From assembly GCF_032191835.1 (NCBI RefSeq), contig NC_083234.1, positions 26,660,001 through 26,724,000 on the forward strand: a stretch of DNA of 64,000 nucleotides. Reading direction: 5' to 3'. Each line of letters opens with the position of its first letter. Position 1 is the stretch's first letter. The position numbers and the translations under genes were made by a program. The stretch is from Heteronotia binoei. Lineage: Eukaryota. The notes below the pieces were generated by a model, which was not told the origin of the DNA, did not search any database, and worked only from the letters and a program-made list of their open reading frames with translations. Shown here piece after piece: positions 8,271 through 28,499 of this stretch.

Positions 8271-10417
8271 ACCTGCAGCAAGTAGGGTTACCAACTACAA
8301 CTTGGAGAATTCCTGGAGATTTGGCAGAATTTGGGAAAGGCAAAATTGCAATTGGCAACACTGTGAAACCATAAAGCCCACCATTCAAAGCTGCCGTTTG
8401 TTTCAGGGGAACTGATCTGTAGTCTGGAGATCAATCTCAGTTCCAAGATAATTCCAGGATCCACCTTGAGGTTGGTAACTCTAGCTGAAGAGGAATATTT
8501 ACAGTCCAAACTACAATTGTTTGTGAGTAACTGTTGCAGGCCAAAGTTGGTAGCTTCAAAGTAGCCTTCAAAGTTTTGTCAAGTATTCGATTGTGGACTA
8601 ATTTCAACTGCTGTTTCCAGTCCTTGCAACTGAAGCAAAGCTAATACAACCTTGGCAACCCAAATTATGAAAAGGGGAGGGAAAGAAATGGTAGGAGTAA
8701 GAACAAGATTGGCATTTATTATTAATCTTCATATGGCAGATTTGAAAAAAAGACTGAAGACTCATATACAGTGCAATCCTAAATTGAGTTATAGCCTTCT
8801 AAGCCTGTTGGAAGATTGCATTGATATTCCTAAACAGAAGCATATTATGAGGTAGTCTAGTATAAGCATAAAAAGAGGCAACTAGAAAAGAAACAGCACG
8901 TTTGTAAAGGGCCATCAAGTCGCAGCTGACTTAGGGTGACCCTATAGGGTTTCCAAGGCAAGAGATGAACAGAGGTGGGTTTAGCAATGCAACACTGTAT
9001 TTCCTTGGTGGTCTCCCATCCAAGTATTAACCAGGCGTTACCTTGCTTAGCTTCTAAGATCTGACAAGAATGGGCTAGCCTTGGCCACCCAAGTCATAGC
9101 AGAAGAAACATATGTAGGACCAAAGCCCACAAAGGGAGGCCAGACACATTTTAACACAATTCAACCATCAATCCTGTCACACTGGATCAAGTAAACAGAG
9201 CCAAATCAGAACAAAACACTGCGTATAGTCAAACCATAGAACACTAATGCACGCCGAAGCATATACATAATATATCAGAATTCCATATCCGTACATAAGT
9301 ATTCCCTTAAAGCCCAAAGTCCTGAATCACAAAGTGTCCAAGAACATGCATTTAACAACAGTCCATATTGCAAATTCCAAAGATGATACTCCAGAGTTCC
9401 AAACAAGATCTTGGCGGTGCTTCAATGTTTTCTAGTCAAGCTTTCTCAGTGGAGAAGCATCGCTGTACATCAGGCACAAACTGGACTTCCAAAGCCAAAC
9501 ACTTGCGTCATTCAACACAGAGGACAGATAATCTTTCTCACTCTTCCACCAATTAATGAGCCTTCTGATAATGAGTGAAAGTCCTGTGGAGTATCATCTT
9601 TGGAATTTGCAATATGGACCACTGCTAATTGGATGTTTTTGGATACTCTCTGTGATTGAGGACATTTGGCTTTAAGGGAATACTTCTTATGCATGGATAT
9701 GGAATCCTGATATATAATGTATATCTTTTGGAGGGCAATATACTACCTCTTTGGCATTTAGTGTTATATGGTTCCACTACACACAGGCTGCAGGAACGAT
9801 GAAGCCTGACTTTTATTTCCAGCTATGAAGCCCACCCTACAGAAACCAGATGCAAAAAAGAAAAGAAAATGCTGCTTCTGTCCTAAACACGGCACCAGCC
9901 TTTGATTCAGAAACATTAACAAGCTGGGGTCTTAATTTCATGCTTTGCTGCTGTCACTGTGACACAGGAACATAAACTGGACAAGTGAGGAAGAGCTGCA
10001 AAACAGCCCTTAAGGATGCTGAACTAAACAGTTTGGGACCATCCCGCCCAGTATGACTCCCCCTCACCTCCTTCAGTCAAGATCAAAGGGTCTTCTATAG
10101 GTACCTGGCCCATTAATAGCTTGCTTGTCAACCACCAAGGCACAGACATTTTAAGTGCTCGCCCCTTCTCTCTGGAATCCGCTTCCTGGGGAAGTTTGTG
10201 CCCTGCTGGGTCTTCCATCATTCTACAGAGCTGGCAAAGCTGGTTTGTTTCATGCAGTCTTTGGGTAATGTTGCAAATTGGGGAAATGGCTAGTCATTTT
10301 AATTCTAATAGCAGTTTATTGTATTGTTTTATTTTGGTTTTATTGTTCTATTTAACATTTTTATTTGCATTTATTGTATTTTGAAATGTTAACAGTTAAC
10401 ATCTCCTGTGGGGAGAG

Positions 10418-11144
10418 TGTTAAGCCAATTGCCCTAAAAATAGGGTTCTGAGGAATTTAGCGTGGTGGGCAATCAGCCTTTTAGTGAGATCTTGAGAACC
10501 TATTATACGGAAGGTGTCTGCTTTGAGAGTTAACCTCCAAGTAACGAGACAAGATGGTCTAATAATAATGGGGTGTTTTATTTAAGGAATAAGGGCAAAC
10601 ATACAAGGGTATAAAATCATACAACATACATACAGGCCTAAGAAAACAGATATGAAATTAATAGAGGGGTAACACAAGGGTAAAAACATAGGGTATATGA
10701 CCTGGTCCTGGTGGCTTAGGGTCCAGTCACCACTAGAAGATATAGACATGCACTGCGATGTGCCATGCCTGATGCTCCTTACTTAGAGTAGGGAGGGAGG
10801 AACAATCTGGTTACATATTGCTCAGGCATAGAGAGAGTGAGCATGGCTTTCTCTCTGGTTATATTATTTTTAAAAAGGAAAAGGTCCTCCCAAAAAGGGG
10901 CTGGCTTGTTGGTGGGCAGTATCTTGTCTATTCTGGGTACCTGATTGGATGCCCACCTCCAGCCAATGAGCAGACCTGACTCTGGTCACCTGAATGGATC
11001 TCCAGGTAACAGTGGGACAGGGGGAGGCTCCAAAGTGGCAGTTTGGGCAAGGCATGAGTGGAAGCGTGGGTGGAGGGGATTAAACAAGCTATCCAAACTT
11101 ATCTAAAGGTGACAATAGAGGGCCAAATTGGTACCCAATCTATA
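10418..11144 (-). mobile_element. Possible solo LTR
   Basis: TG...CA ends are possible. On the minus strand a TATA-like sequence (~10860) precedes AATAAA (~10578). No TSD found. Confidence 0.3.
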
Positions 11145-13436
11145 CAAAGAACTTCTGGCTCTGTGGAAGACTGGTCTTGCTCTTCTGGCTAGCACAGTCC
11201 TTTGTCTGAAGTTCCGTTTGACAAAGACTTGGGCAGTCTGGCAGGATCCATGCCTAAGCTAAGCTTGATTGCCTTATGTAGATGTAACAGCTGTTGTGTA
11301 CGTGAGCCTCTCACTTCTCTGTCATGGAGTCTAGCACTGCAGGAAGATGGTCGCCGATGATGTTAGCCGACCAACATGGCTTTCATGGTCAAGGCTGGAA
11401 ACCGCTTGCCTGGATAGTTTCTGGCGACGCGACTTCTTCCACTGCAACGGTCGAGATGTTGCATGCACAGAGCGGCTGGAAACCCATCTGTACTTCTGGC
11501 TAGCACTCTTCCAGAGATATAGAGTGCTGTTGTAACGCTGAGGCTGTTAGTATTCACAGAAGTCTCTTATAAAATGGTAGATAAAACCCACGTTTCACAG
11601 CAGATGTGTGTGAGTTGTATCTCCAGGCACCCTGGCAACCAAATGGGTGATTACGATGTCCATATATAACTGAAATTAGGGGTCTCTTGCTTACAAGAGT
11701 GTGTGGGGTAAAAGTAAATAAACAGAATTCTGACACCATTTGTTTTATTGTAATGTAACAGGTTTTCCAAAAAAAGTCATGAGGATTAATGTTGGTTTGG
11801 CCTCTGGTATTGGGAACTGTCTTCTCAGAACTCACACATCAAGTTCAAAACACACGCACTTCACATACAGCACAGTCTGGTGTACGTCTAATACTTTTAC
11901 CATCAAACACAGAACTTTGTTGGGCCCTCAGGAGCCTTAAATATATAGTCTAAAAGAACATGTTTCCATTGCCTTGTACATCAGTGAATATTCTCAGACA
12001 GAGCAGGCTGTGCTTCTTCCAGAGAGCGGGATGCCAAAGAAATGAGATCCACCGTTCAGTGGTGAGATGGGCCAGTGGGAAGGAACAACATGCTTCTCGT
12101 ATCCCATGTGAGCAAAGGCATCCTTTAGTCTAGCTTGTATCAAAAATGCTTCCGCCCAATAGTCCAAAGTATCAATGTTTAGTCCGTGTTCCAGTTAGTG
12201 GCTTCTGCTTGCATTTTGACACAGGTCCTGTAGATCTAAAAGATATAATAAAGGCAAGGATTAGGGACTTTCGATCATGTTGTTGAAAAACTCAAATAGA
12301 AGTTCAAACATCTTCAAAGCTTTGGTGTTCGGTTATTAGGAACAGCCACTGCTTTCCAGCATTGCGGGGTAAGCAATTGCCAGGTACAGGAGCTTGTATC
12401 TGACAAAGGGAATTTTGACTCTTTAAGGCTTACATATCCTGCAAATCTCGTTGGACTCTTTAGGTGTTACTGGACTCAAATCTAGCTGTTCTACTGCAGT
12501 CCAACACAGCTACCCTCTGGAAAGAATTTATGTTGCAGTTCCTTCTTAAATAGCCAGAGAAGAATAATTAAACCTTAACAAAGGTTCCATACGAATCTTA
12601 TTATAAACCCTAGACCTGTCCTTTCTTCACCTTATGTAGACTAACAGTGTAATCTTAAATATCCCAGTATAAGCCTACTGAAAATCAGTGGAGTAATTAT
12701 GCACAGAGATGTGCAAGTAATTTATATTAAATGCAGCGCTAAAACTTGAGTGCCCCATGCAGCTTCCACCATACTGTTGCCACCAAATAAATATGCTGTA
12801 AGCCAAATGACACTGAAAAAAGACCATCAAATGTTATACAGCTCTCTATTAGTCAATCTGCAACATAAATTTTACAATATAGTAACTTTCATTACATATT
12901 ATATAGAAACATTCAATGTATTCATACACAATTAAACAACATCTGTGGTCAAGGAATATGCATTAAGCTGAAAGTTTCCCCATCTCAATGTAACAAAATT
13001 GCGCTGAAAATGTTCCTTACAAACTCTTAAAGCGACTTGCTCAATAGTAATGTCCATTTAATGACTTTCCTTATTCTGCACTGGAGAAGATCTCTTCTAA
13101 ATAGCTTGCCTCCGTTAGACAAGTATACCTGGATGAAAAAGGGAATACTTCCACAAACTTATCAGCAGGAATGCTTCCACAGACTGATTTACAAAACAGC
13201 AGGATGCGCTCCTCCAGATGGAAAGCGGTTTTGTTAATGACTTCTTCAACTTGCTTCCAGCAGTGAGTATACTTACAACCATTCCTGTTTGGAACCCAAC
13301 GTGAATGAACAAAACTTCAATAATGTGGACCCAGCCTGCTATTATTAGAAAACAAAACCACTTCCAATCCAATGGAAACAACTCAATAACAGGCTGCCAC
13401 ATGGAATGAAGCATCCCCCCCCCACTGCTTACTTAC

Positions 13437-14700: not shown

Positions 14701-15535
14701 TATATATGTGCATGCATCTGAATTTTGGCGTTAAACCTTCAAATTCTCCTCCTAGAATGTCAGCTTTAAAAAGGCAAACACCTTCCAGGGTGAGCAAGTC
14801 CAGAACAGCATCTCTAATCAATGACATGACCCATGTCTGAAACTGACCTTACATACTGTTCAAGATCTGCACAATGAAATACCACCTATTCCCCCAACAC
14901 CATTGTTTTTCCACATAGGATAGCAAATACAATCACAAACAAAACACATGTCATCCTACTACCCTCCCCTCCCCAATGCAACTCATCAACAGAAATTAAA
15001 GGGAGAGAAAAGGAAAAAGAAAGAGAGCTGCACTGATTTAAGCATATTCTGCTATTGGGACAAATGGACTGGAGTATTTATTTCCAAGTTCCACTGGGAA
15101 TGGGGGTATCAAGATTGTGTTTTGTTTGGCTTCTAAAAAGTTGTATATAATGGTAATAGGTCTACAGAGAATTTCCAAGGACTGGAGCAGAGAAAGGGGG
15201 TCAGCTTCCAAGTCTGCAAAAGACTTAGGTCCAAAAACAGAGGTCAGACAATGTTTTAACTGAGTGTATCGTCAACTAGTTATGACTGAGAGACTAAATT
15301 CTGTGCACAGAGAGCTGAAGGGTTTGAAATCATCATTTGGGCCAATCAACAGAGATAAGAACATTACACCACTAGATTCCCAGTTTTTTCCAACACCTAC
15401 CATTGTTGGTCCTCATCTTAATCTGAGGAATTTTCCAAATAGTTAGATCCCTTTGTGTGAATGAGTCAGAGTCCAATTAAATGTGTCCCACCTATTAGAC
15501 TGAAAAGTCATTTAAAACAGAAAGCACTTACTCAC

Positions 15536-15542: not shown

Positions 15543-15889
15543 ATCAGGATTAAGCTTCAGGTGGGAAGCATCTGCAAATCTCTTCCTTTGCAAGTAACGG
15601 GCCAGAAAAGAGGCTTGAGAAGGGATGTTCCGTTCCTCCACTTACACTGGGACTTGACTCAGGTCAGCTCTTGCTGCATCTGGGGCACCATTGAAAGGAT
15701 GAAAGCAAACTGAGGGTCACTTAAAATAAGCCACAAGCTTAGTCCAAAATGAACACACATTGAGGAGAGCAGTAGTATTGTATGAAATGCAGCTTTCAAA
15801 CCAGAGCCTAGCGATTTGACCCAAACCTACCACACTACTCCCTTATCTGCTGCTGAAACTAATCCCTTCACAAAGGCATAGGCTATGGG

Positions 15890-16042
15890 CAGTGTTCCCT
15901 CTAAGCTGAGTGTGAGCTAGCTTACAGTTTTTTAGCCTCAGTCTTAGTGAATTAATTTATGCAGTAGCTCACAACTTTAATGCCAGTAGCTCACGAAGTA
16001 TAACTTCTGCTCACAAGATTCTACAGCTTAGAGGGAGCATTG
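15890..16042. mobile_element. hAT-type MITE; related copy at ~46312-46505
   Basis: TIR cagtgttccctctaag / cttagagggagcattg; 8-bp TSD gctatggg/gctatagg. Confidence 0.8.
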
Positions 16043-19000
16043 GCTATAGGGCACCTGTGGGTAACATATGGCTTTTAGGCAATATTAGCAAAAATGTGGG
16101 CTGTGTAGAGATTCATTAATGCCATTTTTGTGAGTTTTTTCTTTAAAAACATTCCAGTTGCAGAAATGATTTTTGAGAATACTACTGTAACCCGCTGTTC
16201 AGACAACCAAAAAAACCCAATCAGTTATCATTAACATGTTTGGCTTCTAAAAAATTGTATATATTGATAGTGTGTCTACAGAGAACTTACAAGGACTGGA
16301 GCAGAAAAAAGGGTCAGCTTCCAGAGAAAAGGGATCATCTGCAAAAGCATGTATTGCTGTATCTAATAGTTAACTGGATGGTCTCTGCATGGATAGCAAA
16401 AGCTGCCTAACAGGTGATTCCTTGTGAGACAAGATAGGGATCTTAATTTGCTTCAAGTCTATTCTCACCAACCTGTGATATTCCAGCTTCCAATCATTTT
16501 GCACCCCTCATAAATCTTGAGAAAGATACCAACTCCGCTGACGGGAGGAGAGATAAATCTCTCCTGCTGCAAACAGTTGACAAAGACTTTGAACTTGCTA
16601 CAACTGATCATATACAGCTAATTGCTAAAACTGTTGAATCTACTTGACTACCTCTGCCCTTTCCATTGCTGTCTTTTGTATACTGGAAACCAAGATCTGA
16701 CCCTGGAAATAGTATCTTCCATCTTATACATTAGCTGGTATTTTTTCCCCTTCATATCCATGTTGATGAAATAAAACATTTCCTGATGGATATCAGACTG
16801 AGTTTCTCAGAATCTTACAGGGGATTGAAGGGAATAATGGAGAAGGAAAGGATGGTCAAAGGTTGGAATGTAACCTCCTATGCAAACGCTGAGTATATCA
16901 GATTGCCACTTGCTTAGGATTCATAGTGGGGGCAGCTGCAACCTTTATGGGATGTTTGTTGGTTACTCAAGGATATTTGGTTAGCCACTGTCAACCATCC
17001 AATGCAGAACTAGATGGATGCCAAGGTTGTATTTTGCCTAGGGCCCCCAAAAAACCTTCAGTCAGCCTTGGATGGGTATAACAAGTGAATTTGGACTTGT
17101 GAGTCACCATACCAAAAAAAGTTGGGAACTGCTGTCTTAGAGAATCCTGGACAAACAGCTTTGGGGATAGGCTGGGAAGTTCCTAATCGTTCCCTTTTCT
17201 CACTGGTGATTCCTTGTGAGTCCCCAGCTTATTATACTAACTTAACAATACTAAGAATGTACAACTGAAATGAACACACATTCTTGCCTTTTACATCCAT
17301 GCTTGCATCTCCACCCCTTTTGTTCCAGATTTTAAGACATAAGCTTTCCATGGTGGAGATCATCCTCCTCTGTCCAATACAGTCTCTAGACCACAATACT
17401 TGTTGATGGTGCTATATATAACATAATAAATGATAGCCCTGTGTGGCAAATACTAGTCTCCTTATCCCAAAAAGAAAAAGTTGAATAACCTGTTACTAGG
17501 TTGGCATCATTTGCTAAGAGTAGGTGATGTCTATTGCCTCCTATCCATAGATAAGCTCCATAGGTTCAGATATACTACACATGAATACACACCTGAAGCA
17601 GCACAATACTGAATCAGACCATCAGGGTCAGTATTGTCTGCTCAGAAAGTCAGTGGCTTTCCAGGGTCTCAGACTGAGGTCTTTCACATCACCTACTGCC
17701 AGGTCTTTTTTAACTGGAGATGCTGGGGACTGAACCCTCAGACCTTCTGCACACAAAACACAGGCTCTTCCACTGAGCCACAGCCCCTCTATTTTCAAAA
17801 AAGATTTATTTCAACAGTTTTAACACAATTATTAAAAACTAAGAAATAAATACGATACAATAAAAAGTCTAGAAACTGGCCAGTTCCTCCAGATTGTCTG
17901 CAGATGACGGAATCATCAAGAGCAGTCCAAGGAGCCCAGAGTTCAAGCCCCCGCCTTTGCTACTGCGTAGACCTGTCATTCAGACATAGTACCTGAGGCA
18001 CCTACCAAGAGGATCTCCTCATTCATGGGACATAGGGAAGGAGGGGCAGTCTTTGAGGCCATATGGGGGCTAGAGCTATTCAGGACATTCCAAACCAGAT
18101 TGAAAAATAGCAAGGAGTCAGGGGAAACCTTGGCAAACTGGTATAACATTGCCTTCAGCAACAGATCACATTTCACAAAGCAGGGGCTACAGCATTCTAT
18201 ACTAGTTAAAGCTTCTAAGCAGTTCTCAGGGGCAGCCCCACGGGAAGCAAATGGCAGTAGAAAGGTTAGAAGTGCGCAAGCTTAAGCTTTCATCAGACTG
18301 CAGATCACAGCCTTCCTGTCAGGAATGAAAGGCATACCTGATCATTATCAAAACCTTGGGTGTATCACCAACACTCCTCCCTATGGGTCACTAGCCTAGT
18401 TGACACTGTGGGCATTTCCAAAATTTCGAAAAAAGGCAGCAGGAGCCACCACAAAACGGCTGCCGTAGGAGCAAGGACCATATACAAAATAGTGGGAGGT
18501 TCCACATCACACATTCTTTGCCAATGGAAGAGGTTATCGCTGAGCCCGCTTGCGGGGAGGGTGAGATACAAATCCAATAAATGAAATGAAATGAATGGCT
18601 GCTAACTAGCAACCCAAAGATGATGCCAATGAGGCAGAGGGAAGCCAGGACTGAGGAACAGAAAGAGTTGGGTGGGAAAGCAATGGGTGCCAGGAAATAT
18701 ATCATGAGGCTTCCATGACACACTAGTTGAGATCACCATTCCACATATATGCCAGTGTCCTATGTCTTTAGCCATGCAGACAACAGAAATTCACCATGCT
18801 GAAACTTTTCTGTCCATATGCCCTCCCCCTGCAAAAATCAAAAACCTGACTTGCAGGTACAGGGACAAAGAATGCTTCTGCAGAATTTCCCCAGGATATA
18901 TCACTTTGTTAAAGGCCAGAAGCTGGCAACTTAAACTCACAGACAAGGATGCATAAGGGGTTTAAGAACAAAGAGTCTAGAGAAGGTGTTGAACTCATTT

Positions 19001-20289
19001 GTTATCTGACATAAATGAGACCTTGTTAGGCCAAACCATGTGTGTACCTATTTAAGATTAGGTAGCAGAAACATAAACTTTGGCTGATTCCGCATTAGCC
19101 TTTGCTCCGGCTTCAGCACTGTGTTTCCCCCAGGGCAGATGTTGGTTTCCACATATCTTGACCCAGGGCGGCAGTTTGACCCGCCTCCAAAGCGGTGTCA
19201 CCCTGCGTTTAGGAGATTGTCATTTTGCGAGAAGTTTAATTTTTGATGCAGGTTCGGGGCTTGAGATGTGCGGAACTCACAGCAAATGTGCTGTCAAACG
19301 TACGCATCAGTAGTACACACCCACATAATTCCATGCCCAAGATTCCACCCAGTTATTACGTCACACTTCCTTAATTTTACTTCCTTTGAAAATTATCCGC
19401 CATTATCCGATAAAAAAATATTTTTTTAAAAAGAAAGCAGGTTTCGCATTACAATGCTCTAACATATAACAATGTAACACGATTTTTTTCTTTTACTGAA
19501 TAAATCCCTTACTTTCACCCGCCCGTACTCTTTATGGTATTCCACGTGATTTTGACAATGTGTCATTGCATTGTGATTACAGGCGTGATTAATGCTGCCC
19601 TCCATTATCTGGGAAGTACTCCGCCATGCAATTTGTTCGTTCATAAATTTCTTCCCCCCTCCAACTGAAATAGCTCTGTACTATTATAATTTTTTTTTTG
19701 CCAATAATACCTTTACAATGCAAGCAAATAAATAGTGATGTTCCGCAAACTACTTTTAAGATCCGTGATTGCCGCCTTTATCGATTCCCCCCTCCCCAGC
19801 CGTATGGCCTCAAACGGGAATTTGATTATGTTTATAGCCCTTTGTTGATGTGCTGGGGAAAATATTTTTGATATCCCCGCCCCCCCCCCCCCCTTAAGCA
19901 TCTGTTTTTAATTTGTTGTAGCTTTTAACTGAAAACTGTGTGCTTAGAATTCCAAGTGTGTATTGCAGAACCACTGAGACCAATCCACCATTTCCTGCTT
20001 TAGACAACAGACCAGGGGGCAGATTAATGGCGGTGGCCTCAGCACGATTTAAGGGCTCGCGAGATCTTAAGATCACATACGAGAATCCAGTGCCTCTCTT
20101 TTCCAAGCCAGCCAATAAGCGTGTAACACCACACACGCTGGCCAATCAGATCCTACATATGGTCTGGTGGGAAAAAAGAATGGAAGGCTTGCAATGACAT
20201 TGTGGGAAGAAGACAGATCACTGCTCTGCTGTCTTCCATTCCTCTTGGAGTACTCAGTGGTCGATCAGAAGCCATTGTTAAGCTTGGTG

Positions 20290-22105
20290 ATGGCGTCAGG
20301 TGGCAAACATTCTGGAGTTCGGGGTGTTTCTTGGAGGGAGCGAGAGACCGTGGACCTGCTTGCGATCTGGGGAGAGGATAAAGTACAGAATGCACTGTTT
20401 GCATGTCACAAAAATATAGATCTATTTGAGTGGATCTTCAAACAAATACATGCCCGGGGACACAAGCAGTCTGCCACTGAGTGCAGGACAAAGACAAAGG
20501 CTTTGCGTCAGCAGTGCCGCTTAGTTGTGAGCCATAACGCAAAGTCTGGTGCCTTTCTGCGTTCCTGTCCCCATTTCAAGACTCTAGACCACATACTAAG
20601 CAAAGACAAAGGTATAAAAACACCTAACATGAAGAGGGCTAGTAAAACGATGCTTTTGAGGCGAGAACAAAACAAGTAGAATTTGCCGGCCTCGGACTCT
20701 GAGGAAGTATTAATGCAAGACCTATTCATGATTAATCCCAAATACATCAGTGCATCCTCTCCCAATCCTGGTCCAAGTCTGCCTAATGATGAGTTTCCAT
20801 TTTCCAGAAATGCATCCTCAGGCGGGGATCGCAGAGCGGGTGAGTGTGGCAGGGAGTTGTTCGACGCGGCTGGTATTTTAAAAATTGAAAGTGTCATGTT
20901 TTCGTTGTAACATAACAACGCAATCAAAATAGGTTATGCATGCACGATCTGAGCTAAGAGGTGCTTTCCACCATTCCCTCTAAGCTTTTCAGTTCAGTGA
21001 GCAACAGAACTACTTTATGAGATGCTGATATTAAATTTCCGCGCAAGCATGCTGCATGAATAAGTTTTCTCTAGGGCCAATATTACTCAACTAATAGCCA
21101 TAGCTAAGAAGCGGCACTGATACTATGCAATATTATTCTACGTTATTATTTTAAGGAAATGTTATATGCACCATGCAATGAAAGGACCAATTCTTGTGAT
21201 CTGATTTAATATACCTACCTGATCATCAATAGGTGGGAGCACAGAATTATCTGATGCAGCACCAGAGAAGATGTGGAGAAGATGTGTTCCAAACAATAGA
21301 GCGTGAAAATGTGGAAGGTTTGTGATTCCCATGTTTTTTATCATGTGCTGGTCCAAAAAATTATGCTGCGATTTAAGTTGAGACCACATGCTGGGGTGTG
21401 CTTTCTGTATGTATGGGCATTCCAAGGGATGAGCACCTTGACTTTTTCTTGAAGATTTACACATCCTTCATTATTTCCTAGTTCACTTAATTTATAAACC
21501 TCACCCTGTTTAATCAGGTGTTTAATCAGCTGTTCAATCCCCTGACCTAAAATTCATGTTGGGTTTTTTGTCTCTAAACCAATTTAGGTGAAGTGGTAGC
21601 GCAGGAAGAGGCCACGGATGAGGCAGATACTGGCAAGGAGGACAGGGAGATTGATAATGCCCGGCAGCAACGTGTCGCCATGCTTAACACTGTTGCAAAG
21701 ATGATGGAGCAGGGGGGAAAAGACCACACAGAGGCAATCGAGCGCATGGACAGATGGGTAGAGATGGAGGAGCGGAAGATGCAGATGAATGAAAGAAAAT
21801 TCACAGCACTGCTAGCAGAGGGGGAACATGACAGGAAGTCTCTGGAAGATTCCATGCAGAAGAAAGTTGATGCAATTACGTCTGCTGTGGGTGCCCTATG
21901 TCACTTGGGAGAGATCTTTGCAGGGATAACACCCCAAATCACAAACAAGGAAAAAACATGTGCTTGTTCTTCCGCATCTGGCAGTGCAGAGAAACCTGAT
22001 GCTTGGTGTGCTAACAAGCACCAACGTGGAAGGTTGCCATCAGACATGGATTACCCTGTACTGGCACCGGATACCCTGCCAGAGCAAAAGCATCCTCGGC
22101 TATGA
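20290..22105 (+). pseudogene. Harbinger Myb/SANT-like gene 1 (exons 20290-20839 and 21588-22105; ~355 codons; in-frame TAG at 20677)
   Basis: SWRERETVDLLAIWGEDKVQ...IFKQIHARGHKQSATECRTKTKALRQ...CPHFKTLDHIL is a trihelix Myb/SANT signature. Phase-1 intron CGG|gtgagt...tttag|GT joins in frame. Acidic linker and C-terminal coiled-coil-like region. Confidence 0.85.
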
Positions 22106-22408
22106 TGAACTGGCAAGTGGCAGGACCTATGCTGGTGGCAGGGATAAAAAATGTGCATGCACTGGCAAGGAGAGAGTGCTGTTTGAGCCCTAACCTAATT
22201 TGTGAAGCCATAGTGTGCTTAACATATCCTTCAGCCAGGAAACATTGTTCCCAAGCTTCTGAATGTGTTGTTTTTATGCTTCTTGTTTGGCTTAAATGTT
22301 TTATGTTGGTTGTTTTCCTTTTTGCTTGATGTATATTAAAAACTTATTGCAAGCATGCAGCATTAAAACTTTGAAGTGAAGGGAAGTTCATAAACAATAG
22401 AAAACTTT

Positions 22409-24740
22409 TTATTTACATAACAGAACATTTAACATGCCGCAACGCATTCTTTTATGAAGTCTGTTATATCCTCCCCCCCGCCCACCATCCACCCGCTCTG
22501 CAATTGTTGCCCTGAGTGCTGCCAGCTCCCTCTTCATCTGCCGCTGCCTCTGTTCAACGCTGCCCAAACGTTGATGTGGCGCGTTCACTGCAAGGAATAG
22601 AAAATGAACATGGTGAGTGATGGCTATCGATCTTGCTGAAAGCATACTTAACCGCTCTGGTTTCATGTACTGTGGCCTCGCGTTGTACTCACAGGAGGAC
22701 TGGAACCTCTGTTCCATTCTGCTTAAAGCAGAGAGGACAGCGTTGTCAGACGCTCCAGCAGCAACCTGCTGCTGCAGTCCAGAGGGCCCTACAATGAAGA
22801 AGGTTTGGAGTTTTGTAAAGTACAACACAGGTCTGATGTGGCACAGACAAAGCAATGTCATAGATCACTGAATGAATAATTATCATACCTGGTTCATCAT
22901 CTGGCCTCTCAGGTTCTTCCAGATATCCAGAGATGGCAGCCGCAGCGGCAATCAGCATGTCTATGCCACCCCCCCCTCGGAGTATATCTGGATGCATGCT
23001 CTGAAAAAACAAGGAGCACACACAACTTTTTAGGCTTAGTCCACATTGACAGTTGTTGTAATGTAATGCGATCAAACTGATTTCATTTCCATGCTTAAAC
23101 TGCCTTCAAAATTCATTCCGCAGTACCTGAGACGGGCATTGACTCCTCCCGCCCCTCCTCCTGCTCCTCTTCCTCATCCTGTGGCTTAGGAACATCCTCT
23201 ATTGGCCGCGGTGGCTCAGGAGGTTCTTCATCCTGCTCCAATCGTCGCCTTTGCTTATGCTGTCGCACCGGCTGCCTCCTGATGGTGTCCACTGTGAATG
23301 AAGAACTGATAATTAGGGCAGTGCCCAAGATCTGAAAATAATATCGACAGCAACCTTTCTTAATTGTCAGACACATGTCCCAAATATTGTCTGGCCTAAA
23401 GTACACATCAGGGTAAGGGAGGTGAGGGTGGTTGGGCACATTCCTAAGTAATTATAAGCGACGGAGCTGCTCATGGATTGCAACATTGCAAATGCCACCC
23501 ATATAAAAAGCCAATGGTATGTTTGATTCTACGGTTTTGTGTGCATGGCTTTCTGTTCCCCCACTCATCAAGCGAGGCCACCTTTGAAACTCGTGGGCAG
23601 TCATCCATGGCCTCAGGAACCATCTCTGCATTTGCCTGATTTCACTATCATTGTGTTGCTTAAAATGTCACTGCATTCAAATCAACTCACATGTTAGCAA
23701 TGCTTCCATCACTCTTCTTTCAAATTAAGCTACCAAGCATCATGAAAGAATGGCGAAAGGTGCCCAGGATAATGTTTTCAGTATTACATTCCATTTATTT
23801 CATTCCCCTCCCTCTCTCCTCTCTTCCTTCCTCACTTCTTACCCTCCCCCTCCTTCCCACATTACTCCTTTCCTTCCTTCATTTTTCATTTTCTATGTAA
23901 TCTTTTATTTCTCTCTATTTTTCTTTCAATCTTCCTTACTTCCTTTAGCTTTCATTTTTTCTTCCTTTCTCCCTTTCCTTGCATTCACCCCCCTCCTTCT
24001 TCCCTTCCATCACACTCCATTGTAAACGCCTCCCCCTCTTTTATTCCCATCCCCCCCCAAGTTATATCTACAGTGATTTGTTGTGTATCAAAAAGCACCT
24101 GATGTCTAATGTGGTCATCATGCGTAGAAGGTTTGGCCACCCATGGTCTGAATTGAGTGCTCTAGTTCTTGGTGAAATTTTTAAAGGGGAAATAATTTTG
24201 ACACCTGACTGAAGGTTTCATGTTCCTGATTGTTAGTATATGAATCTGCACACTGGGTATGCTTGTTGTGGGTTAATTGCAAATGTGATTGCCCATCATG
24301 TGCACATTGTGTTAGCCGAACACAAAGTTTTGGTGTCCAGGTGCCATGAAGAACAGATATTGGCACTGCTTACCAAAATGGTGATGATCTTCCCACCGTG
24401 GTCTTCCCGCCGCATTCCAGAGCTCCATCATCCGGGAGTGGAACTGCGTCTGGCAGCTCTCCCTAGGAATGCCTCCCCAAGCCTCAAGGCTTGCCATGAA
24501 GTCGCACTTTATGCGTTTAAATTTGGAGTGACATTGGTCTGCATTCCTATTGAAGCCACGTCTGGTCATCCTCCAAGCAATGGCCTAATATATTCTCCTG
24601 GTCTCAATGTGAGTGCTGGCCATTAGCTCTCTTACATGCCCTGAATCGCCCACTAGGTTCAATAGGAGTTCCACCTCCTCTCTCTGCCAGAAAGTGCCTC
24701 GCCTCCTCTCCACTGGGCAGCCATTTTCTAAAAATCGCAT
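22409..24740 (-). pseudogene. Harbinger Myb/SANT-like gene 2 (exons 24740-24374, 23291-23127, 23000-22889, 22788-22693, 22587-22409)
   Basis: GTFWQREEVELLLNLV...*AIAWRMTRRGFNRNADQCHSKFKRIK...MMELWNAAGRP. TAG at 24585-24587, a probable frameshift in a G8 run near 22970, and four GT-AG phase-1 introns. Confidence 0.75.
23790..24060 (+). repeat. CT-rich low-complexity tract within a MITE remnant in Myb2 intron 1
   Basis: Near-pure pyrimidine run; the MITE-like end ggtttggccaccc lies at ~24130-24142. Confidence 0.7.
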
Positions 24741-25021
24741 TACAACGATCCTGCGAGGTAGTGAAACATGTTTAGTTTTTGAATTGACCAATGACTGGGT
24801 ACCCTGAAGCAGAAGCCTCAACCCTTTTTTATATATAGTCGTAGTTTTTGCTGTGTTCCTCACTGGTCTTTCCCCGACCCCCAAACCCATGCTTTCCCAC
24901 CAACCATGATGCCATAAGAACGTAAGAGAAGCCATGTTGGATCAGGCCAACGGCCCACGAGCAACGTTGTCAATGAGGCAACCTCTTCTACAGTATTCAT
25001 GTAATATATGTCAGCAGAGCA

Positions 25022-25411
25022 ATGAAGTCAGCAGGGAAGAACCAGCTGACTATCCCTGGACCAAAGGAGGCCAAACTTCAAAACACCCGTACACGGGCCT
25101 TCTCCATCGCAGCTCCACAACTATGGAACCAGCTCCCGGAAGAAGTGCGAGCCCTGCGGTGCCTTGACCAGTTCCGCAGGGCCTGCAAGACCTCTCTTTT
25201 CAGGATGGCCTTTGCTGGCTGAGAGACTGCTGTGAGTGACTTCGCTATTATCATTTATAAATGGAATTAGCACCTGGAAATCTGTTAATTGGAATGTTTT
25301 AAAGTTAATGTGATTTTAAACCCTGTATAATTTTATGAAATGTTGTTAGCCGCCCTGAGCCCACCTCAGCGGGGAGGGCGGGATATAAATAAAATGTTAT
25401 TATTATTATTA
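25022..25411 (+). mobile_element. L2-type LINE 3' fragment nested in the Harbinger
   Basis: TRTRAFSIAAPQLWNQLPEEVR...FRRACKTSLFRMAF followed by the tail gccgccctgagccc...ataaataaaatg(att)n. Confidence 0.8.
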
Positions 25412-25677
25412 CATTTATTTTTCAACAAAACGATGAACATTTCTCATAGTGGTACAAATAAGATAAAAAATGTAATATGAGACGGCAATGTTGTGAATTC
25501 ACACGCCTTATGGAGTGTTAGTATTTGTTCGTTATGTTTTTCCGAAATAACGCAATAGTACTTGATAGGAAAAATAAACGTTCATAGAGAAATAACATCA
25601 GCATATCAACGTGTACGGTGCTCATGCATATAATCTGCAATGGCTTGCCGTACCCGCTTCCCCTCCTCAAGTTTCCT

Positions 25678-27172
25678 TCAGTTTAAGGCCCTTAAATTTA
25701 TCTCCTCTTCCTCTGGCACCAGTATTGTGTCCTGCTCTATCATCAAGTCCAAATTTACATGCCCCTTCTCCTCGCAGATATTGTGCAGTATCGCACAGGC
25801 TTTAGCTATGGAGCTAACATTTGTAATGCAGACTTGTAGACGCGCTAAGAGGATGCGCCAGCATGCCTTCAGTCTACCGAAAGCACACTCAACATTTCTT
25901 GCCCTGCAGTGTTTCTTGTTGAAATTCCTTTGCACATCCCCCCGAGGAGAACGGAAAGGAGTCATCAGCCATGGCCTCATGGGGTATGCACACCCTGAGA
26001 ACAATGGCGGGAACGGTCACTGTTCCCAGATGAATCGTGGGATTTCCAGGAACAAACACTCTGGCATCCATCATAGTGCACAGGCTACTGTTCGCAAAAA
26101 CGAAGGCGTCATGTGAACTTCCACTAAATCCCACCTCTGCGTCAATGAATCTACCAGTGTGATCCACTGTTCCTTGGATAATCACGGAGCAGAAATTTTA
26201 CGATTACCAAATCCATTTATTCTTCCGCCCGGGGCAAAAATCGGAATGTGTCTATGGCAGCGATACAATGAGGCATGCCAGTTTTCCGAAACCAACCATT
26301 ATCTGAAAAAACAAAAAATAATCTTTAAGACAGCATCCCTGAAGTGTACGCGTGCACTGCTTCCCCGTCTGCCATGTTTACCGGCCCCCTCCCTCCCAGT
26401 AATCAAAGAAAAGGAAACATCAACAGAATGTTCAGCTTTGTAATCTCTATTTTGGTTTCTCTAAACGTTTCTAATTTAATTTTTCTTGACCACCACTACC
26501 CACAAGTGAACCGTGTAGTCTGTGGTGACATTATTATGTTACAATGAAATTATAACGAGCTGTTAAAAATTTTTTTACCTTGCCAATTTCATTCCCAAGG
26601 CTCACAATCTTTCAGAACAGCTTCTCCTCAAGAGCGAGACACACCTCCAAGAAAATTTCGCCAGCCGTAAATAATCCAATTCCGAACTGCTCACCCAATA
26701 GGCTATACGAGACACCGTTCGCTAAGTACCACATGCAGTCAGCGACACGCTTCATCGGTGGCACTGGGGACCTCATCCTTGTCTTCCTCACAAGGATTGG
26801 CTCGACGGCATGCACGCTCTCAAGGAACGTTGACCGTGACATTCTGAAGTGCGTTAGCCATTGCTTGTCGCTTCACACTTGCAGAACAAAATTCTCCCAC
26901 CAATCTACGGTTCTGGGGAATATCCAATATTGCTGTGGGAAGCGTAGGCCAGCAAGCTCGTGCCATCTCTGCAATCTCCGCCTGCGGGCAACAGTAAGGT
27001 GGCCAAGGCATGGCAAAGGTGGCGATGACGCTGAAGAGCAGAGATGGCTGAGATCCGTCTTCTTTTGCATGCATGGGTTGAATATCCTGCCATGGCACTA
27101 GTCGCAGCATTCAAAGCTAGAAGTATCAGCGCTGATTTGGGATAGCTGTCTAAGCCGGTGATCATCCATCAT
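25678..27172 (-). pseudogene. Harbinger (HARBI1-like) DDE transposase (exons ~27172-26579 and 26302-25678)
   Basis: Motifs WWENFVLQV*SDKQWLTHFRMSRSTF, AID(GTH)IPI (partly deleted), QGTVDHTGRFID...GSSHDAFVF, AYPMRPWLMTPF, ARNVECAFGRLKACWR and ACAILHNICE. Several stops and frameshifts. Confidence 0.92.
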
Positions 27173-28499
27173 GCACGGCACGCAAGCACGCAAACAGCGC
27201 TTAGAAGACAATTAAATAAAAATGGTGGATTGCCAACTTAGATTTCCCAAGGCTTAGATAAACTACCAATGGCAGGGCAAAAGGAAAACACGTGACTTTG
27301 CCAGTATTGTGCCTCTGGTATTACGCTGTAACGCAGGAAAAAACCACGATTGCGTTGTAACGTGAACACGCATCCGTGTAAAAAAAAAAAAAAAAGGAAA
27401 ATGCATGGATAAGTAAGGAGGGAGGGGGAAATTGCTCCGATTGTGGTAGAAACTCCGGGAGCAACAGTAATACGGAATCCTCTAGTGAGGAATTGGGAAA
27501 TCACACCCGCATAGAACAGCCCTGGAGCAAGAGGGAGCCAAACGGCAAATGCGGAATCAGCCTTTGTAAAGGACACAGACAAACACAATTAAACTTTAAA
27601 AAACACAACTTAAAACAAGCTTAAAATATTAGCACTTATTGATCTTAAGGGTGCTTTCTTTGTAGCTTTCCCATGGGATCCAGGGAACTGGGCAAAGGAA
27701 GCTCTGGCTCTTTCCCTCCCTCTCCAGAGGACCAGGAGGGGAAGGATCCTCAGCCAATGGAAAAAATAGAGGTTTTGCTCTGTAGCTTCTGTGCAATCGA
27801 GCAAGCCTTGTAAAGCAAGCTGAGATGCAAAAAAAAGTAAGAGAGAGGGAGAAGGAAGCAGACAAGAGACAGTTGCTCCGCGGCCTGATAGGAGCCCTCC
27901 TGGGGCCTGATTCAGCCCCTAGGCCGCATGTTGACACGCCTAGTCTAGAGGCACCAAGGAAGTATTATTCAAGGTATAAGCTTTTGTGTGCAAGCACATT
28001 TCTTCAGATGCTTTGTTGCTTTTAAAGGTGCCACTGGACTCAAACTCTGCTTTGCTGCTTCAAACCGAGAGGGGCGGGCTACCACCCTGAATCTATTCAA
28101 GGGGTTTAAGAATTCTCCTTGGCTTTCTTACACAACTTTGCCAAACTCCAAGATTCCCCACCCGGTAAGAAATTTAAGAACAGAAGAGATAAAATGAATG
28201 GAATATATTCCAGCCACCAACACCACACACCACCCCAGCTCCAAACTTAACTTACTTTCTCCCCCCTACTTGCCTGTTGCTGGGAACGGGAGCAGAAGCT
28301 GCAAAGGCAAACGCAGTTCTATTTTTAAAACAAAACTTTTTTTTAAAAAAAGTCCTAATTTTATAATGTTATGCGTCATATGCTTTGTTAGAGAACTCTG
28401 GCAAATAAGTTTGATTTCAAACGTCCGGGTTTTTAAAAAAAAAACCCTCACTGCTATTATCACACGGTGCGAATCGAACAAGGACACCTGAAAACTGGC

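What the first reader, a model, noticed from the sequence alone, without database searches (positions are those of the whole stretch)
19082..27562. Three-gene Harbinger transposon: one transposase plus two different Myb/SANT genes
Seen: one pair of TIRs and a 3-bp duplication enclose TIR > Myb1(+) >< Myb2(-) < transposase(-) < TIR. I found no internal TIR that would indicate one element nested in another, and the Myb1 and Myb2 stops are only ~300 nt apart. Established: canonical PIF/Harbinger elements encode two proteins, a DDE transposase and one Myb/SANT DNA-binding partner (domesticated as HARBI1/NAIF1). Inference: this is a three-component Harbinger lineage in which the second, divergent Myb/SANT protein has a separate job, for example binding the other end, autoregulation or anti-silencing. 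This is the best candidate for an undescribed system in the window.
Basis: partly seen in the sequence, partly recalled or inferred. Interest (0 to 1): 0.85.

Follow-up and report, generated by a model that had tools for sequence, protein, structure and literature searches.

The report
Gecko Harbinger transposon with two Myb genes
This is a dead copy of a cut-and-paste (Harbinger) transposon lineage, found so far in geckos, that carries a second, very different Myb-type DNA-binding gene besides the usual transposase and single Myb partner; intact, recently mobile copies with the same gene set exist in the leopard gecko.

Summary
Observation confirmed. Window 19082-27562 is one 8,481-bp PIF/Harbinger insertion. 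It has 22-nt TIRs (20/22) and a TTT target duplication, verified against a paralogous empty site. The genes run Myb1(+) >< Myb2(-) < DDE_Tnp_4 transposase(-).

This copy is dead: all three genes have stops or frameshifts, one catalytic D is lost, and a SINE is inserted.

The three-gene content is not a one-off.
- Leopard gecko has three 10.2-kb copies, 98.7-99.5% identical, with homologous TIRs and 3-bp TSDs. Order and orientation match the window and every ORF is intact.
- A second Eublepharis family and a three-copy Heteronotia family also carry Myb1-type, Myb2-type and transposase genes. In Heteronotia Myb2 is inverted. One Eublepharis family holds an extra Myb2 paralogue.

Myb1 and Myb2 are deep paralogues (about 30% identity, 100/100 split). 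Between families dN is 0.15-0.38 while dS is saturated. These transposases form an all-gecko clade. An Elgaria relative has Myb1 plus transposase only.

What Myb2 does is not shown. No paper I found describes two Myb genes in a Harbinger; Repbase and Dfam could not be checked. The scan noted another such copy in this genome (s1-323894, unchecked).

The parts
19079..19081 (.). left copy of the 3-bp target-site duplication (TTT)
   Evidence: single TTT at the paralogous empty site L006:21796-21799
19082..19103 (+). left terminal inverted repeat
   Evidence: 22 nt, 20/22 with the right TIR; core ATTCCGCA is homologous to the gecko TIR core ATTTCGCA
20290..20790 (+). Myb1 exon 1 (Myb_DNA-bind_4 trihelix domain). 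In-frame stop at 20677-20679. The 3' boundary is approximate.
   Evidence: (E=2.3e-13); 54% identical to Eublepharis P0001; Myb1 HMM 184.8 bits against Myb2 HMM 24.1
21600..22105 (+). Myb1 exon 2 (long coiled-coil tail). Stop codon 22103-22105. The 5' boundary is approximate.
   Evidence: tblastn to the gecko exon 2; two-exon model with GT-AG and matching phase in L001
22409..22600 (-). Myb2 last exon (short leucine-zipper-like coil). Stop codon 22409-22411. Boundary approximate.
   Evidence: Same position and character as the C-termini of P0002, P0004, P0005 and P0178. The sequence match alone is weak (E=2.6).
23113..23439 (-). Myb2 middle region, acidic linker ORF
   Evidence: acidic linkers in the same position in P0002-P0004
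24369..24740 (-). Myb2 exon 1 (second, divergent Myb_DNA-bind_4 domain). In-frame stop at 24582-24584.
   Evidence: Myb2 HMM 134.7 + 60.3 bits with no Myb1 hit; 63% identical to the Heteronotia Myb2 domains
24913..25400 (.). secondary SINE insertion between Myb2 and the transposase. Not an original part of the element. Boundaries approximate.
   Evidence: contig depth in the thousands confined to this stretch, loose ends at 24913-24958; SINE-type ORF
25627..27112 (-). remains of the transposase gene (HTH_Tnp_4 + DDE_Tnp_4). At least 3 stops, at least 2 frameshifts, second catalytic Asp lost.
27541..27562 (-). right terminal inverted repeat
27563..27565 (.). right copy of the target-site duplication (TTT)

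Best explanation
The window holds a decayed copy of a PIF/Harbinger DNA transposon from a lineage, seen so far only in geckos. Its autonomous elements encode three proteins: a DDE_Tnp_4 transposase and two anciently diverged trihelix (Myb_DNA-bind_4) proteins.

Shown:
- The element is a single insertion with TIRs and a 3-bp TSD.
- The same gene set recurs in at least four families in two other gecko genera.
- One family is young and fully intact.
- Both Myb genes evolve under constraint.

Inferred:
- Myb1 is the canonical Harbinger partner. It is the type also found next to a related transposase in a non-gecko lizard, it is nearest to the ZSCAN29/MSANTD7-like chordate group, and it ends in a basic NLS-like tail. 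Its likely roles are nuclear import of the transposase and binding of the TIR-like subterminal repeats.
- Myb2 is an added, lineage-specific second sequence-specific DNA-binding subunit. My preferred reading (about 45%) is that it is needed together with Myb1 to assemble the transposase on the ends. The next reading (about 35%) is that it binds the second motif class, a palindromic CG motif upstream of all three genes, and controls the element's own expression.
For: - Single insertion: TIR, TSD and empty site.
- Same order and orientation in three Eublepharis copies, 10,189 bp and 98.7-99.5% identical, with sharp ends, homologous TIRs, TSDs TCA and TAT, and all ORFs open.
- Second Eublepharis family (L004/L011): about 70-77% aa identity to the first, perfect 17-nt TIRs, TSD TTA.
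- Heteronotia family with three copies, 92-97% identical, also carrying Myb1, Myb2 and the transposase.
- Myb1 and Myb2 form two clades at 100/100 support. Identity is 28-36% between types and 47-86% within a type. The two HMMs separate cleanly.
- Between the two Eublepharis families dS is saturated and dN is 0.15-0.38 for all three genes, a nominal dN/dS below 0.1.
- Transposase tree: the window sits in an all-gecko clade (SH-aLRT 99), sister to Heteronotia. Other squamates and turtles lie outside.
- Elgaria has Myb1 plus transposase and no Myb2 within 22 kb.
- The Myb1 domain scores better than Myb2 against platypus ZSCAN29. The Atlas places Myb1 with a chordate 'MSANTD7' cluster.
- Two cis-motif classes. 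TIR-core repeats lie in the first ~130 bp of both ends. AACGTT is enriched in the L001 locus (12 hits, 11 of them inside the element, against 3.2±1.9 expected for the whole locus) and clusters 5' of each of the three genes. A different CG palindrome sits in the same places in Heteronotia.
- Canonical roles of the Harbinger Myb partner: PMC9392472, citing Sinzelle 2008.
Against: - The window copy is dead, so nothing about function can be read from it.
- No transcript or splice evidence was obtained.
- The Myb1-tail with Myb2-tail complex prediction gave no verdict.
- In the L004/L011 family one 99%-identical copy has lost exon 1 of the internal Myb2. That Myb2 protein is annotated at one locus only, whereas the extra paralogue Myb2b is annotated at 27 or more loci. 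A particular Myb2 copy is therefore dispensable, at least when another is present.
- The Elgaria pair shows that a related transposase can exist with Myb1 alone.
- Gene order differs between families, so the layout is not itself conserved.
- dS saturation makes dN/dS qualitative only.
- Only a handful of loci per family were seen; no genome-wide census was possible.
Confidence: 0.78

Rival explanations
1. Myb2 is not a transposition cofactor. It is an element-encoded regulator (autorepressor, anti-silencing factor or copy-number control) or a captured passenger kept for reasons unrelated to the transposition chemistry.
For: - A palindromic CG motif lies upstream of all three genes in two unrelated families.
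- Myb2-type genes are gained, inverted and replaced among families.
- A related transposase coexists with Myb1 alone in Elgaria.
- Myb2-type domains are fused to KRAB in Sphaerodactylus.
Against: - Every gecko family examined keeps at least one Myb2-type gene.
- dN is as low as for the transposase.
- No binding or expression data exist either way.
Confidence: 0.35
2. The three-gene content is a one-off composite: one Harbinger, or a solo Myb fragment, nested in another in this window only.
For: Nesting is common among transposons. L005 in Heteronotia does look composite. An ancient nesting may well be how Myb2 was first acquired.
Against: - One TIR pair and one TSD, confirmed by an empty site.
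- No internal TIR.
- The same three genes in the same order in three Eublepharis copies with identical ends.
- The same gene set in further families.
Confidence: 0.03
3. The genes are a domesticated host cluster (HARBI1/NAIF1-like) rather than a transposon.
For: Squamates hold several domesticated Harbinger transposases (PMC3014272; PMC12262214). KRAB fusions of both the transposase and Myb2 exist.
Against: - The window copy is pseudogenised and bounded by TIRs and a TSD.
- The gecko relatives are multi-copy on different chromosomes, with sharp shared ends and different flanks.
Confidence: 0.02

Closest known systems
Harbinger3_DR and other vertebrate Harbingers (Kapitonov & Jurka 2004; Sinzelle et al. 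2008; fish survey PMC9179366)
   Same: DDE_Tnp_4 transposase with an N-terminal HTH, short TIRs, 3-bp TSD, and a separately encoded trihelix/Myb-like protein that imports the transposase and recruits it to the ends (PMC9392472).
   Different: Those elements are described with two genes. This lineage carries two Myb-type genes only about 30% identical to each other (sometimes three), each spliced and each with its own coiled-coil tail. The elements are 8.5-15.5 kb long.
PIF/Pong/Ping of plants (ORF1 + TPase)
   Same: Two-component logic: the transposase needs a separately encoded Myb-like ORF1 (PMC2836001, listed).
   Different: Different clade. Single ORF1. TSD TTA/TAA.
Harbinger-Snek of sea kraits (PMC8437027)
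   Same: A recently active Harbinger in a squamate genome.
   Different: Two genes; horizontally acquired from marine animals. That paper states Harbingers were not known from solely terrestrial vertebrates. The gecko families here are an exception.
HARBI1/NAIF1 and MSANTD genes; plant ALP1/ALP2 and HDP1/HDP2
   Same: Derived from the same two Harbinger proteins. They show that the transposase and the Myb partner bind each other.
   Different: Single-copy host genes without TIRs. The elements here are mobile or decayed transposons. KRAB fusions seen in Sphaerodactylus may be new domestications from this lineage.

Membership tests
PIF/Harbinger superfamily | DDE_Tnp_4 (PF13359) transposase with an N-terminal HTH | tested here: met
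   Window pieces: DDE_Tnp_4 E=3.2e-14 and 8.2e-6, HTH_Tnp_4 E=6.8e-5. Intact gecko homologue: E=2e-34. The DDE residues are present in the gecko protein; the second D is lost in the window.
PIF/Harbinger superfamily | short terminal inverted repeats | tested here: met
   22 nt, 20/22. Unique in the window. Homologous TIR cores in the gecko families.
PIF/Harbinger superfamily | 3-bp target-site duplication (usually TWA) | tested here: met
   TTT in the window, proven by the empty site. TCA and TAT in L001 and L003. TTA in L011. L002 shows none.
PIF/Harbinger superfamily | separately encoded Myb/SANT/trihelix protein | tested here: met
   Two of them, both PF13837.
Canonical two-gene Harbinger architecture | exactly one Myb-like gene beside the transposase | tested here: not met
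   Two Myb types in the window and in 9 gecko loci. Two Myb2-type genes plus Myb1 in L004.
Spy-type PIF relatives (no TSD) | insertion without target duplication | tested here: not met
   TTT is duplicated relative to the empty site.
Domesticated HARBI1/NAIF1-type genes | single-copy orthologous host locus without TIRs, intact ORFs | tested here: not met
   TIRs and TSD are present, the window ORFs are broken, and the relatives are multi-copy.
A catalogued Repbase/Dfam family | match to a deposited consensus | not testable with these tools
   No access to Repbase or Dfam. Literature searches found no description.

The most novel reading that the evidence does not exclude
Transposition of these elements needs all three proteins: an obligate three-component eukaryotic cut-and-paste system. 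Two different trihelix proteins, probably as a hetero-oligomer through their coiled-coil tails, would read two different cis-motif classes and together license the transposase. The system is naturally intact and testable in the leopard gecko, a laboratory animal.
Probability: 0.35. Interest if true: 0.75.

Novelty: new variant of a known kind. Interest (0 to 1): 0.58.

Why it matters
Harbingers are the textbook case of a transposase that cannot work without a separately encoded DNA-binding partner, and that pair has been domesticated repeatedly (HARBI1/NAIF1, MSANTD genes, ALP1/ALP2).

A lineage that has kept a second, very different partner across several diverged families (possibly tens of millions of years, not dated here) is a natural experiment. 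It can show how accessory DNA-binding subunits are added to a transposition machine, and it is a likely source of new host genes, such as the KRAB fusions seen here.

It also corrects two published views: that squamate Harbingers are only domesticated relics (PMC3014272) and that Harbingers are absent from terrestrial vertebrates (PMC8437027). The leopard gecko has full-length copies 98.7-99.5% identical with all ORFs open. The components for a vertebrate transposition assay, and possibly a tool, therefore already exist in nature.

Tried and rejected
- Complex prediction: Myb1 coiled-coil tail with Myb2 tail (L004 family) scored 0.30, under the 0.34 mark. No verdict; not evidence either way.
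- RNA evidence: the only run holding words of the element is a metatranscriptome. Laid on 20000-25999 it gave a few short, low-depth contigs (for example 20280-20589, 97% alike), huge depth on the SINE only, and no splice joints in the three genes. Neither expression nor introns are shown.
- Context look-ups failed for Paroedura P0009, Carettochelys P0034 and Eublepharis P0005. The turtle outgroup and a fourth gecko genus could not be examined.
- The Sphaerodactylus locus L007 is a KRAB-transposase fusion with no Myb nearby, so it is uninformative about layout.
- Heteronotia L005 has Myb1, transposase and Myb2 all on one strand, plus a window-like TIR at 12173. However, its Myb2 and a flanking Myb1 fragment belong to the L006 family, while its transposase is window-like. 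I treated it as a composite locus and did not count it.
- No TSD could be read for L002 or for the Heteronotia family ends.
- The protein Atlas gave only generic Myb_DNA-bind_4 neighbours for Myb2.
- Rfam found nothing in the SINE stretch and TRF found nothing notable.
- The search of earlier findings by sequence was blank.
- Repeat sharing between the window and the fetched loci did not place the host species clearly. The host is inferred to be a gecko only from the transposase tree, the TIR likeness and the shared flanking repeat.
Full report
**The observation**

The inverted-repeat scan finds arms 19082-19103 and 27541-27562, 22 nt and 91% complementary. Their first 15 nt are identical. With up to two mismatches this 15-mer occurs nowhere else in the 64-kb window, against 0.15 chance matches expected. 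TTT lies directly outside both arms.

A stronger proof of the boundaries came by accident. The left flank (18986-19081) and the right flank (27563-27636) align to one contiguous stretch of an unrelated interspersed repeat in a Heteronotia binoei locus (L006:21905-21726). The junction there holds a single TTT. So the 8,481 bp went in as one piece and duplicated 3 bp.

**Gene content of the window copy**

ORF listing, six-frame reading and Pfam give the following.
- On the + strand, a Myb_DNA-bind_4 gene (E=2.3e-13) with ATG about 20290. It has a second coiled-coil exon ending at the stop 22103-22105.
- On the - strand, a second Myb_DNA-bind_4 gene. Its Myb domain is at 24740-24369, followed by an acidic middle part (23439-23113) and a last exon ending at the stop 22409-22411.
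- On the - strand, a Harbinger transposase (HTH_Tnp_4 and DDE_Tnp_4) from about 27112 to 25627.

- Myb1 has an in-frame stop at 20677-20679 and Myb2 one at 24582-24584.
- The transposase has at least three stops and two frameshifts and has lost its second catalytic Asp.
- A SINE has landed at about 24913-25400.

**Is the three-gene content a property of a family?**

The Myb1 piece found one database relative, a 168-aa Eublepharis macularius protein (P0001, 54% identity). That exact protein is encoded at three places on two chromosomes (L001-L003).

tblastn with the window's pieces shows the same series at all three places: Myb1(+), its second exon, Myb2(-), transposase(-).
- The three loci are 98.7-99.5% identical over 10,189 bp, and similarity stops abruptly at both ends.
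- The ends are 15-nt TIRs whose core (ATTTCGCA) matches the window's (ATTCCGCA). Two of the three copies show perfect 3-bp TSDs, TCA and TAT.
- All exons of all three genes are open in all three copies.
- Myb1 exon 1 joins exon 2 through a consensus GT-AG pair in matching phase.

This is a young and probably still mobile element with the window's architecture.

Further families add to this.
- A second Eublepharis family (L004, L011) is about 70-77% identical in protein to the first. It has Myb1, Myb2 and the transposase in the same relative order. It has perfect 17-nt TIRs and a TTA duplication in L011.
- This second family also carries a further Myb2-type gene (P0178, 'Myb2b'). It lies between the transposase and the right subterminal region, and that region is homologous to the right end of L001.
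- A Heteronotia family (L006, L009, L010; 92-97% identical over about 10.7 kb) again holds Myb1, Myb2 and the transposase. Here Myb2 points the other way.

**Relationship of the two Myb genes**

HMMs built from each type score about 185-210 bits on their own type and 18-36 bits on the other. In a joint tree the two types split at 100/100 support with very long stems. Identity is 28-36% between types and 47-86% within a type. They are old paralogues, not recent duplicates.

Between the two Eublepharis families synonymous sites are saturated. dN is 0.16-0.38 for Myb1, 0.20-0.23 for Myb2 and 0.15-0.26 for the transposase. Both Myb genes have therefore been held by selection about as tightly as the transposase. 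The ratio can only be given qualitatively.

**Range of the lineage**

An exhaustive HMMER search with the gecko catalytic domain returned squamate proteins first, then turtles.

In the tree, the window's transposase lies inside a clade made only of gecko sequences (Eublepharis, Heteronotia, Sphaerodactylus, Paroedura). It is sister to Heteronotia L005/P0022. Elgaria, Pogona, Python, Sceloporus, Anolis and Salvator proteins lie outside that clade.

Other points on range:
- The one non-gecko context I could fetch (Elgaria, L008) has a Myb1-type gene and the transposase but no Myb2 within 22 kb.
- A profile search with Myb2 proteins found strong hits in geckos, plus three unnamed short contigs. 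Platypus ZSCAN29 was a distant hit, and it fits the Myb1 HMM better.

I infer that Myb1 is the ordinary Harbinger partner and that Myb2 was added in, or before, the gecko lineage. The host of the window is probably a gecko, but this is not proven.

**How it may work**

For canonical Harbingers, the Myb-like protein binds the N-terminus of the transposase, carries it into the nucleus, binds the ends and recruits the enzyme (PMC9392472 citing Sinzelle 2008).

In the intact gecko elements I see two kinds of repeated cis-sequence.
- Copies of the TIR core lie within the first ~130 bp of both ends.
- A palindromic CG motif lies further in. In the L001 element AACGTT occurs 11 times. The whole 20.7-kb locus holds 12, against 3.2±1.9 expected, and 0 of 100 shuffles reached 12. 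All 11 lie in three clusters at the 5' regions of Myb1, Myb2 and the transposase.
- In the Heteronotia family a different palindrome (CGATATATCG) sits in the corresponding places.

Two motif classes and two DNA-binding proteins suggest a division of labour. That is inference only.

Both Myb proteins end in coiled coils, long in Myb1 and short in Myb2. The one complex prediction allowed gave no verdict.

Facts that caution against calling Myb2 essential:
- L011 has lost exon 1 of its internal Myb2.
- That internal Myb2 protein is annotated at one locus only, whereas Myb2b is annotated at 27 or more loci.

Even so, every gecko family seen keeps at least one Myb2-type gene.

**Comparison with what is known**

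The element meets each defining feature of PIF/Harbinger that I could test: transposase family, TIRs, 3-bp TSD and a separate Myb gene. It fails only the canonical two-gene content.

Full-text searches found no paper describing a Harbinger with two Myb genes.
- The fish survey and the MSANTD paper speak of two ORFs.
- The Anolis survey found only five domesticated transposase ORFs.
- The sea-krait paper states that Harbingers were unknown in solely terrestrial vertebrates.

Repbase and Dfam could not be consulted, so a silent catalogue entry cannot be excluded.

An earlier first-stage note of this scan (s1-323894) reports another three-gene Harbinger on a different piece of the same genome. 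I could not read that DNA.

**Verdict**

The feature is real and well bounded, and it is a member of PIF/Harbinger. It is a new variant in gene content that recurs across families and species and is recently active in the leopard gecko. The function of the second Myb protein is open and directly testable with natural intact copies.

Noticed in passing
L004:1-14971 and L011:911-15735 (Eublepharis macularius): This family is about 15.5 kb long and holds four genes: Myb1, Myb2, the transposase and a second Myb2-type paralogue (P0178, 375 aa). L011 has a 0.9-kb deletion that removes exon 1 of the internal Myb2. The P0178 90% cluster has 14 variants at 27 or more annotated loci, against one locus for the internal Myb2 (P0002). 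This looks like one Myb2 paralogue replacing another.
   Followed up: partly
L006:5223-15963, L009:8279-18868, L010:9169-19633 (Heteronotia binoei): A three-copy family (92-97% identical) with the order Myb1> Myb2> <Tnp, so Myb2 is inverted relative to the window and Eublepharis. The TIR is roughly GGGTG[CA]GGTCA[GC]AC. No clean TSD could be read.
   Followed up: partly
L001:9359-10548, 15550-16250, 19128; L006:5613, 6305, 9986, 15486-15503: Palindromic CG motifs cluster at the 5' regions of all three genes: AACGTT in Eublepharis and CGATATATCG in Heteronotia. In the L001 locus there are 12 AACGTT hits, 11 of them inside the element, against 3.2 expected for the locus. They may be a shared promoter element or Myb binding sites. 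The window keeps GTAACG at 27328 and 27357, upstream of the transposase.
   Followed up: partly
L007 (Sphaerodactylus townsendi); P0010, P0175, P0176; P0047: KRAB fusions from this clade: KRAB plus transposase (P0010), and KRAB plus a Myb2-type domain (P0175/P0176) on the same chromosome. A further 1,125-aa model of unknown taxon combines KRAB, a Myb1-like domain, HTH_Tnp_4 and DDE_Tnp_4. These may be domestications, perhaps repressors built from the element's own DNA-binding parts.
   Followed up: no
L008:2148-2468 and 10295-12097 (Elgaria multicarinata): A Myb1-type gene (67% identical to the gecko Myb1 domain) lies upstream of a related transposase on the same strand, with no Myb2 in 22 kb. 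It is either a two-gene relative or a domesticated pair.
   Followed up: partly
window 24913-25400: A SINE is inserted between Myb2 and the transposase. RNA-run contigs pile up here to depths in the thousands (up to about 140,000 in one bin), with several internal deletion variants. The same SINE type lies just left of the gecko element in L001 (ORF 8909-9403).
   Followed up: partly
window 18986-19081 and 27563-27636: The Harbinger inserted into a copy of another interspersed repeat. That repeat is shared with Heteronotia (L006:21726-21905, 73-78% identical) and served as the empty site.
   Followed up: yes
window 23500-24100: A strongly C/T-biased stretch on the + strand (GC skew -0.46, AT skew -0.32) lies inside the Myb2 intron region. 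It translates to Lys/Glu/Arg/Gly-rich low-complexity peptide on the - strand. Its origin was not determined.
   Followed up: no
L001:13874-14740 and 14723-14913: The Eublepharis Myb2 gene contains about nine 87-nt (29-aa) tandem repeats of a Ser/Pro/Glu-rich unit. Next to them is a 95-nt inverted repeat, 93% complementary, with a 1-nt spacer.
   Followed up: no
P0032, P0034, P0173 (Carettochelys insculpta): Turtle relatives of the transposase are annotated as isoforms of tectonic-3, GLCCI1 and spindlin-1. These are chimeric gene models and hint at several recent insertions into genes in the pig-nosed turtle. The loci could not be fetched.
   Followed up: no
L005:7108-13189 (Heteronotia binoei): A composite locus. 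It has a window-like transposase and a window-like TIR (GGCCGTTTTCGCATTAGCG at 12173, - strand). Its Myb2 and an adjacent Myb1 fragment belong to the L006 family (84-86% identical). This suggests recombination or nesting between two three-gene families.
   Followed up: partly
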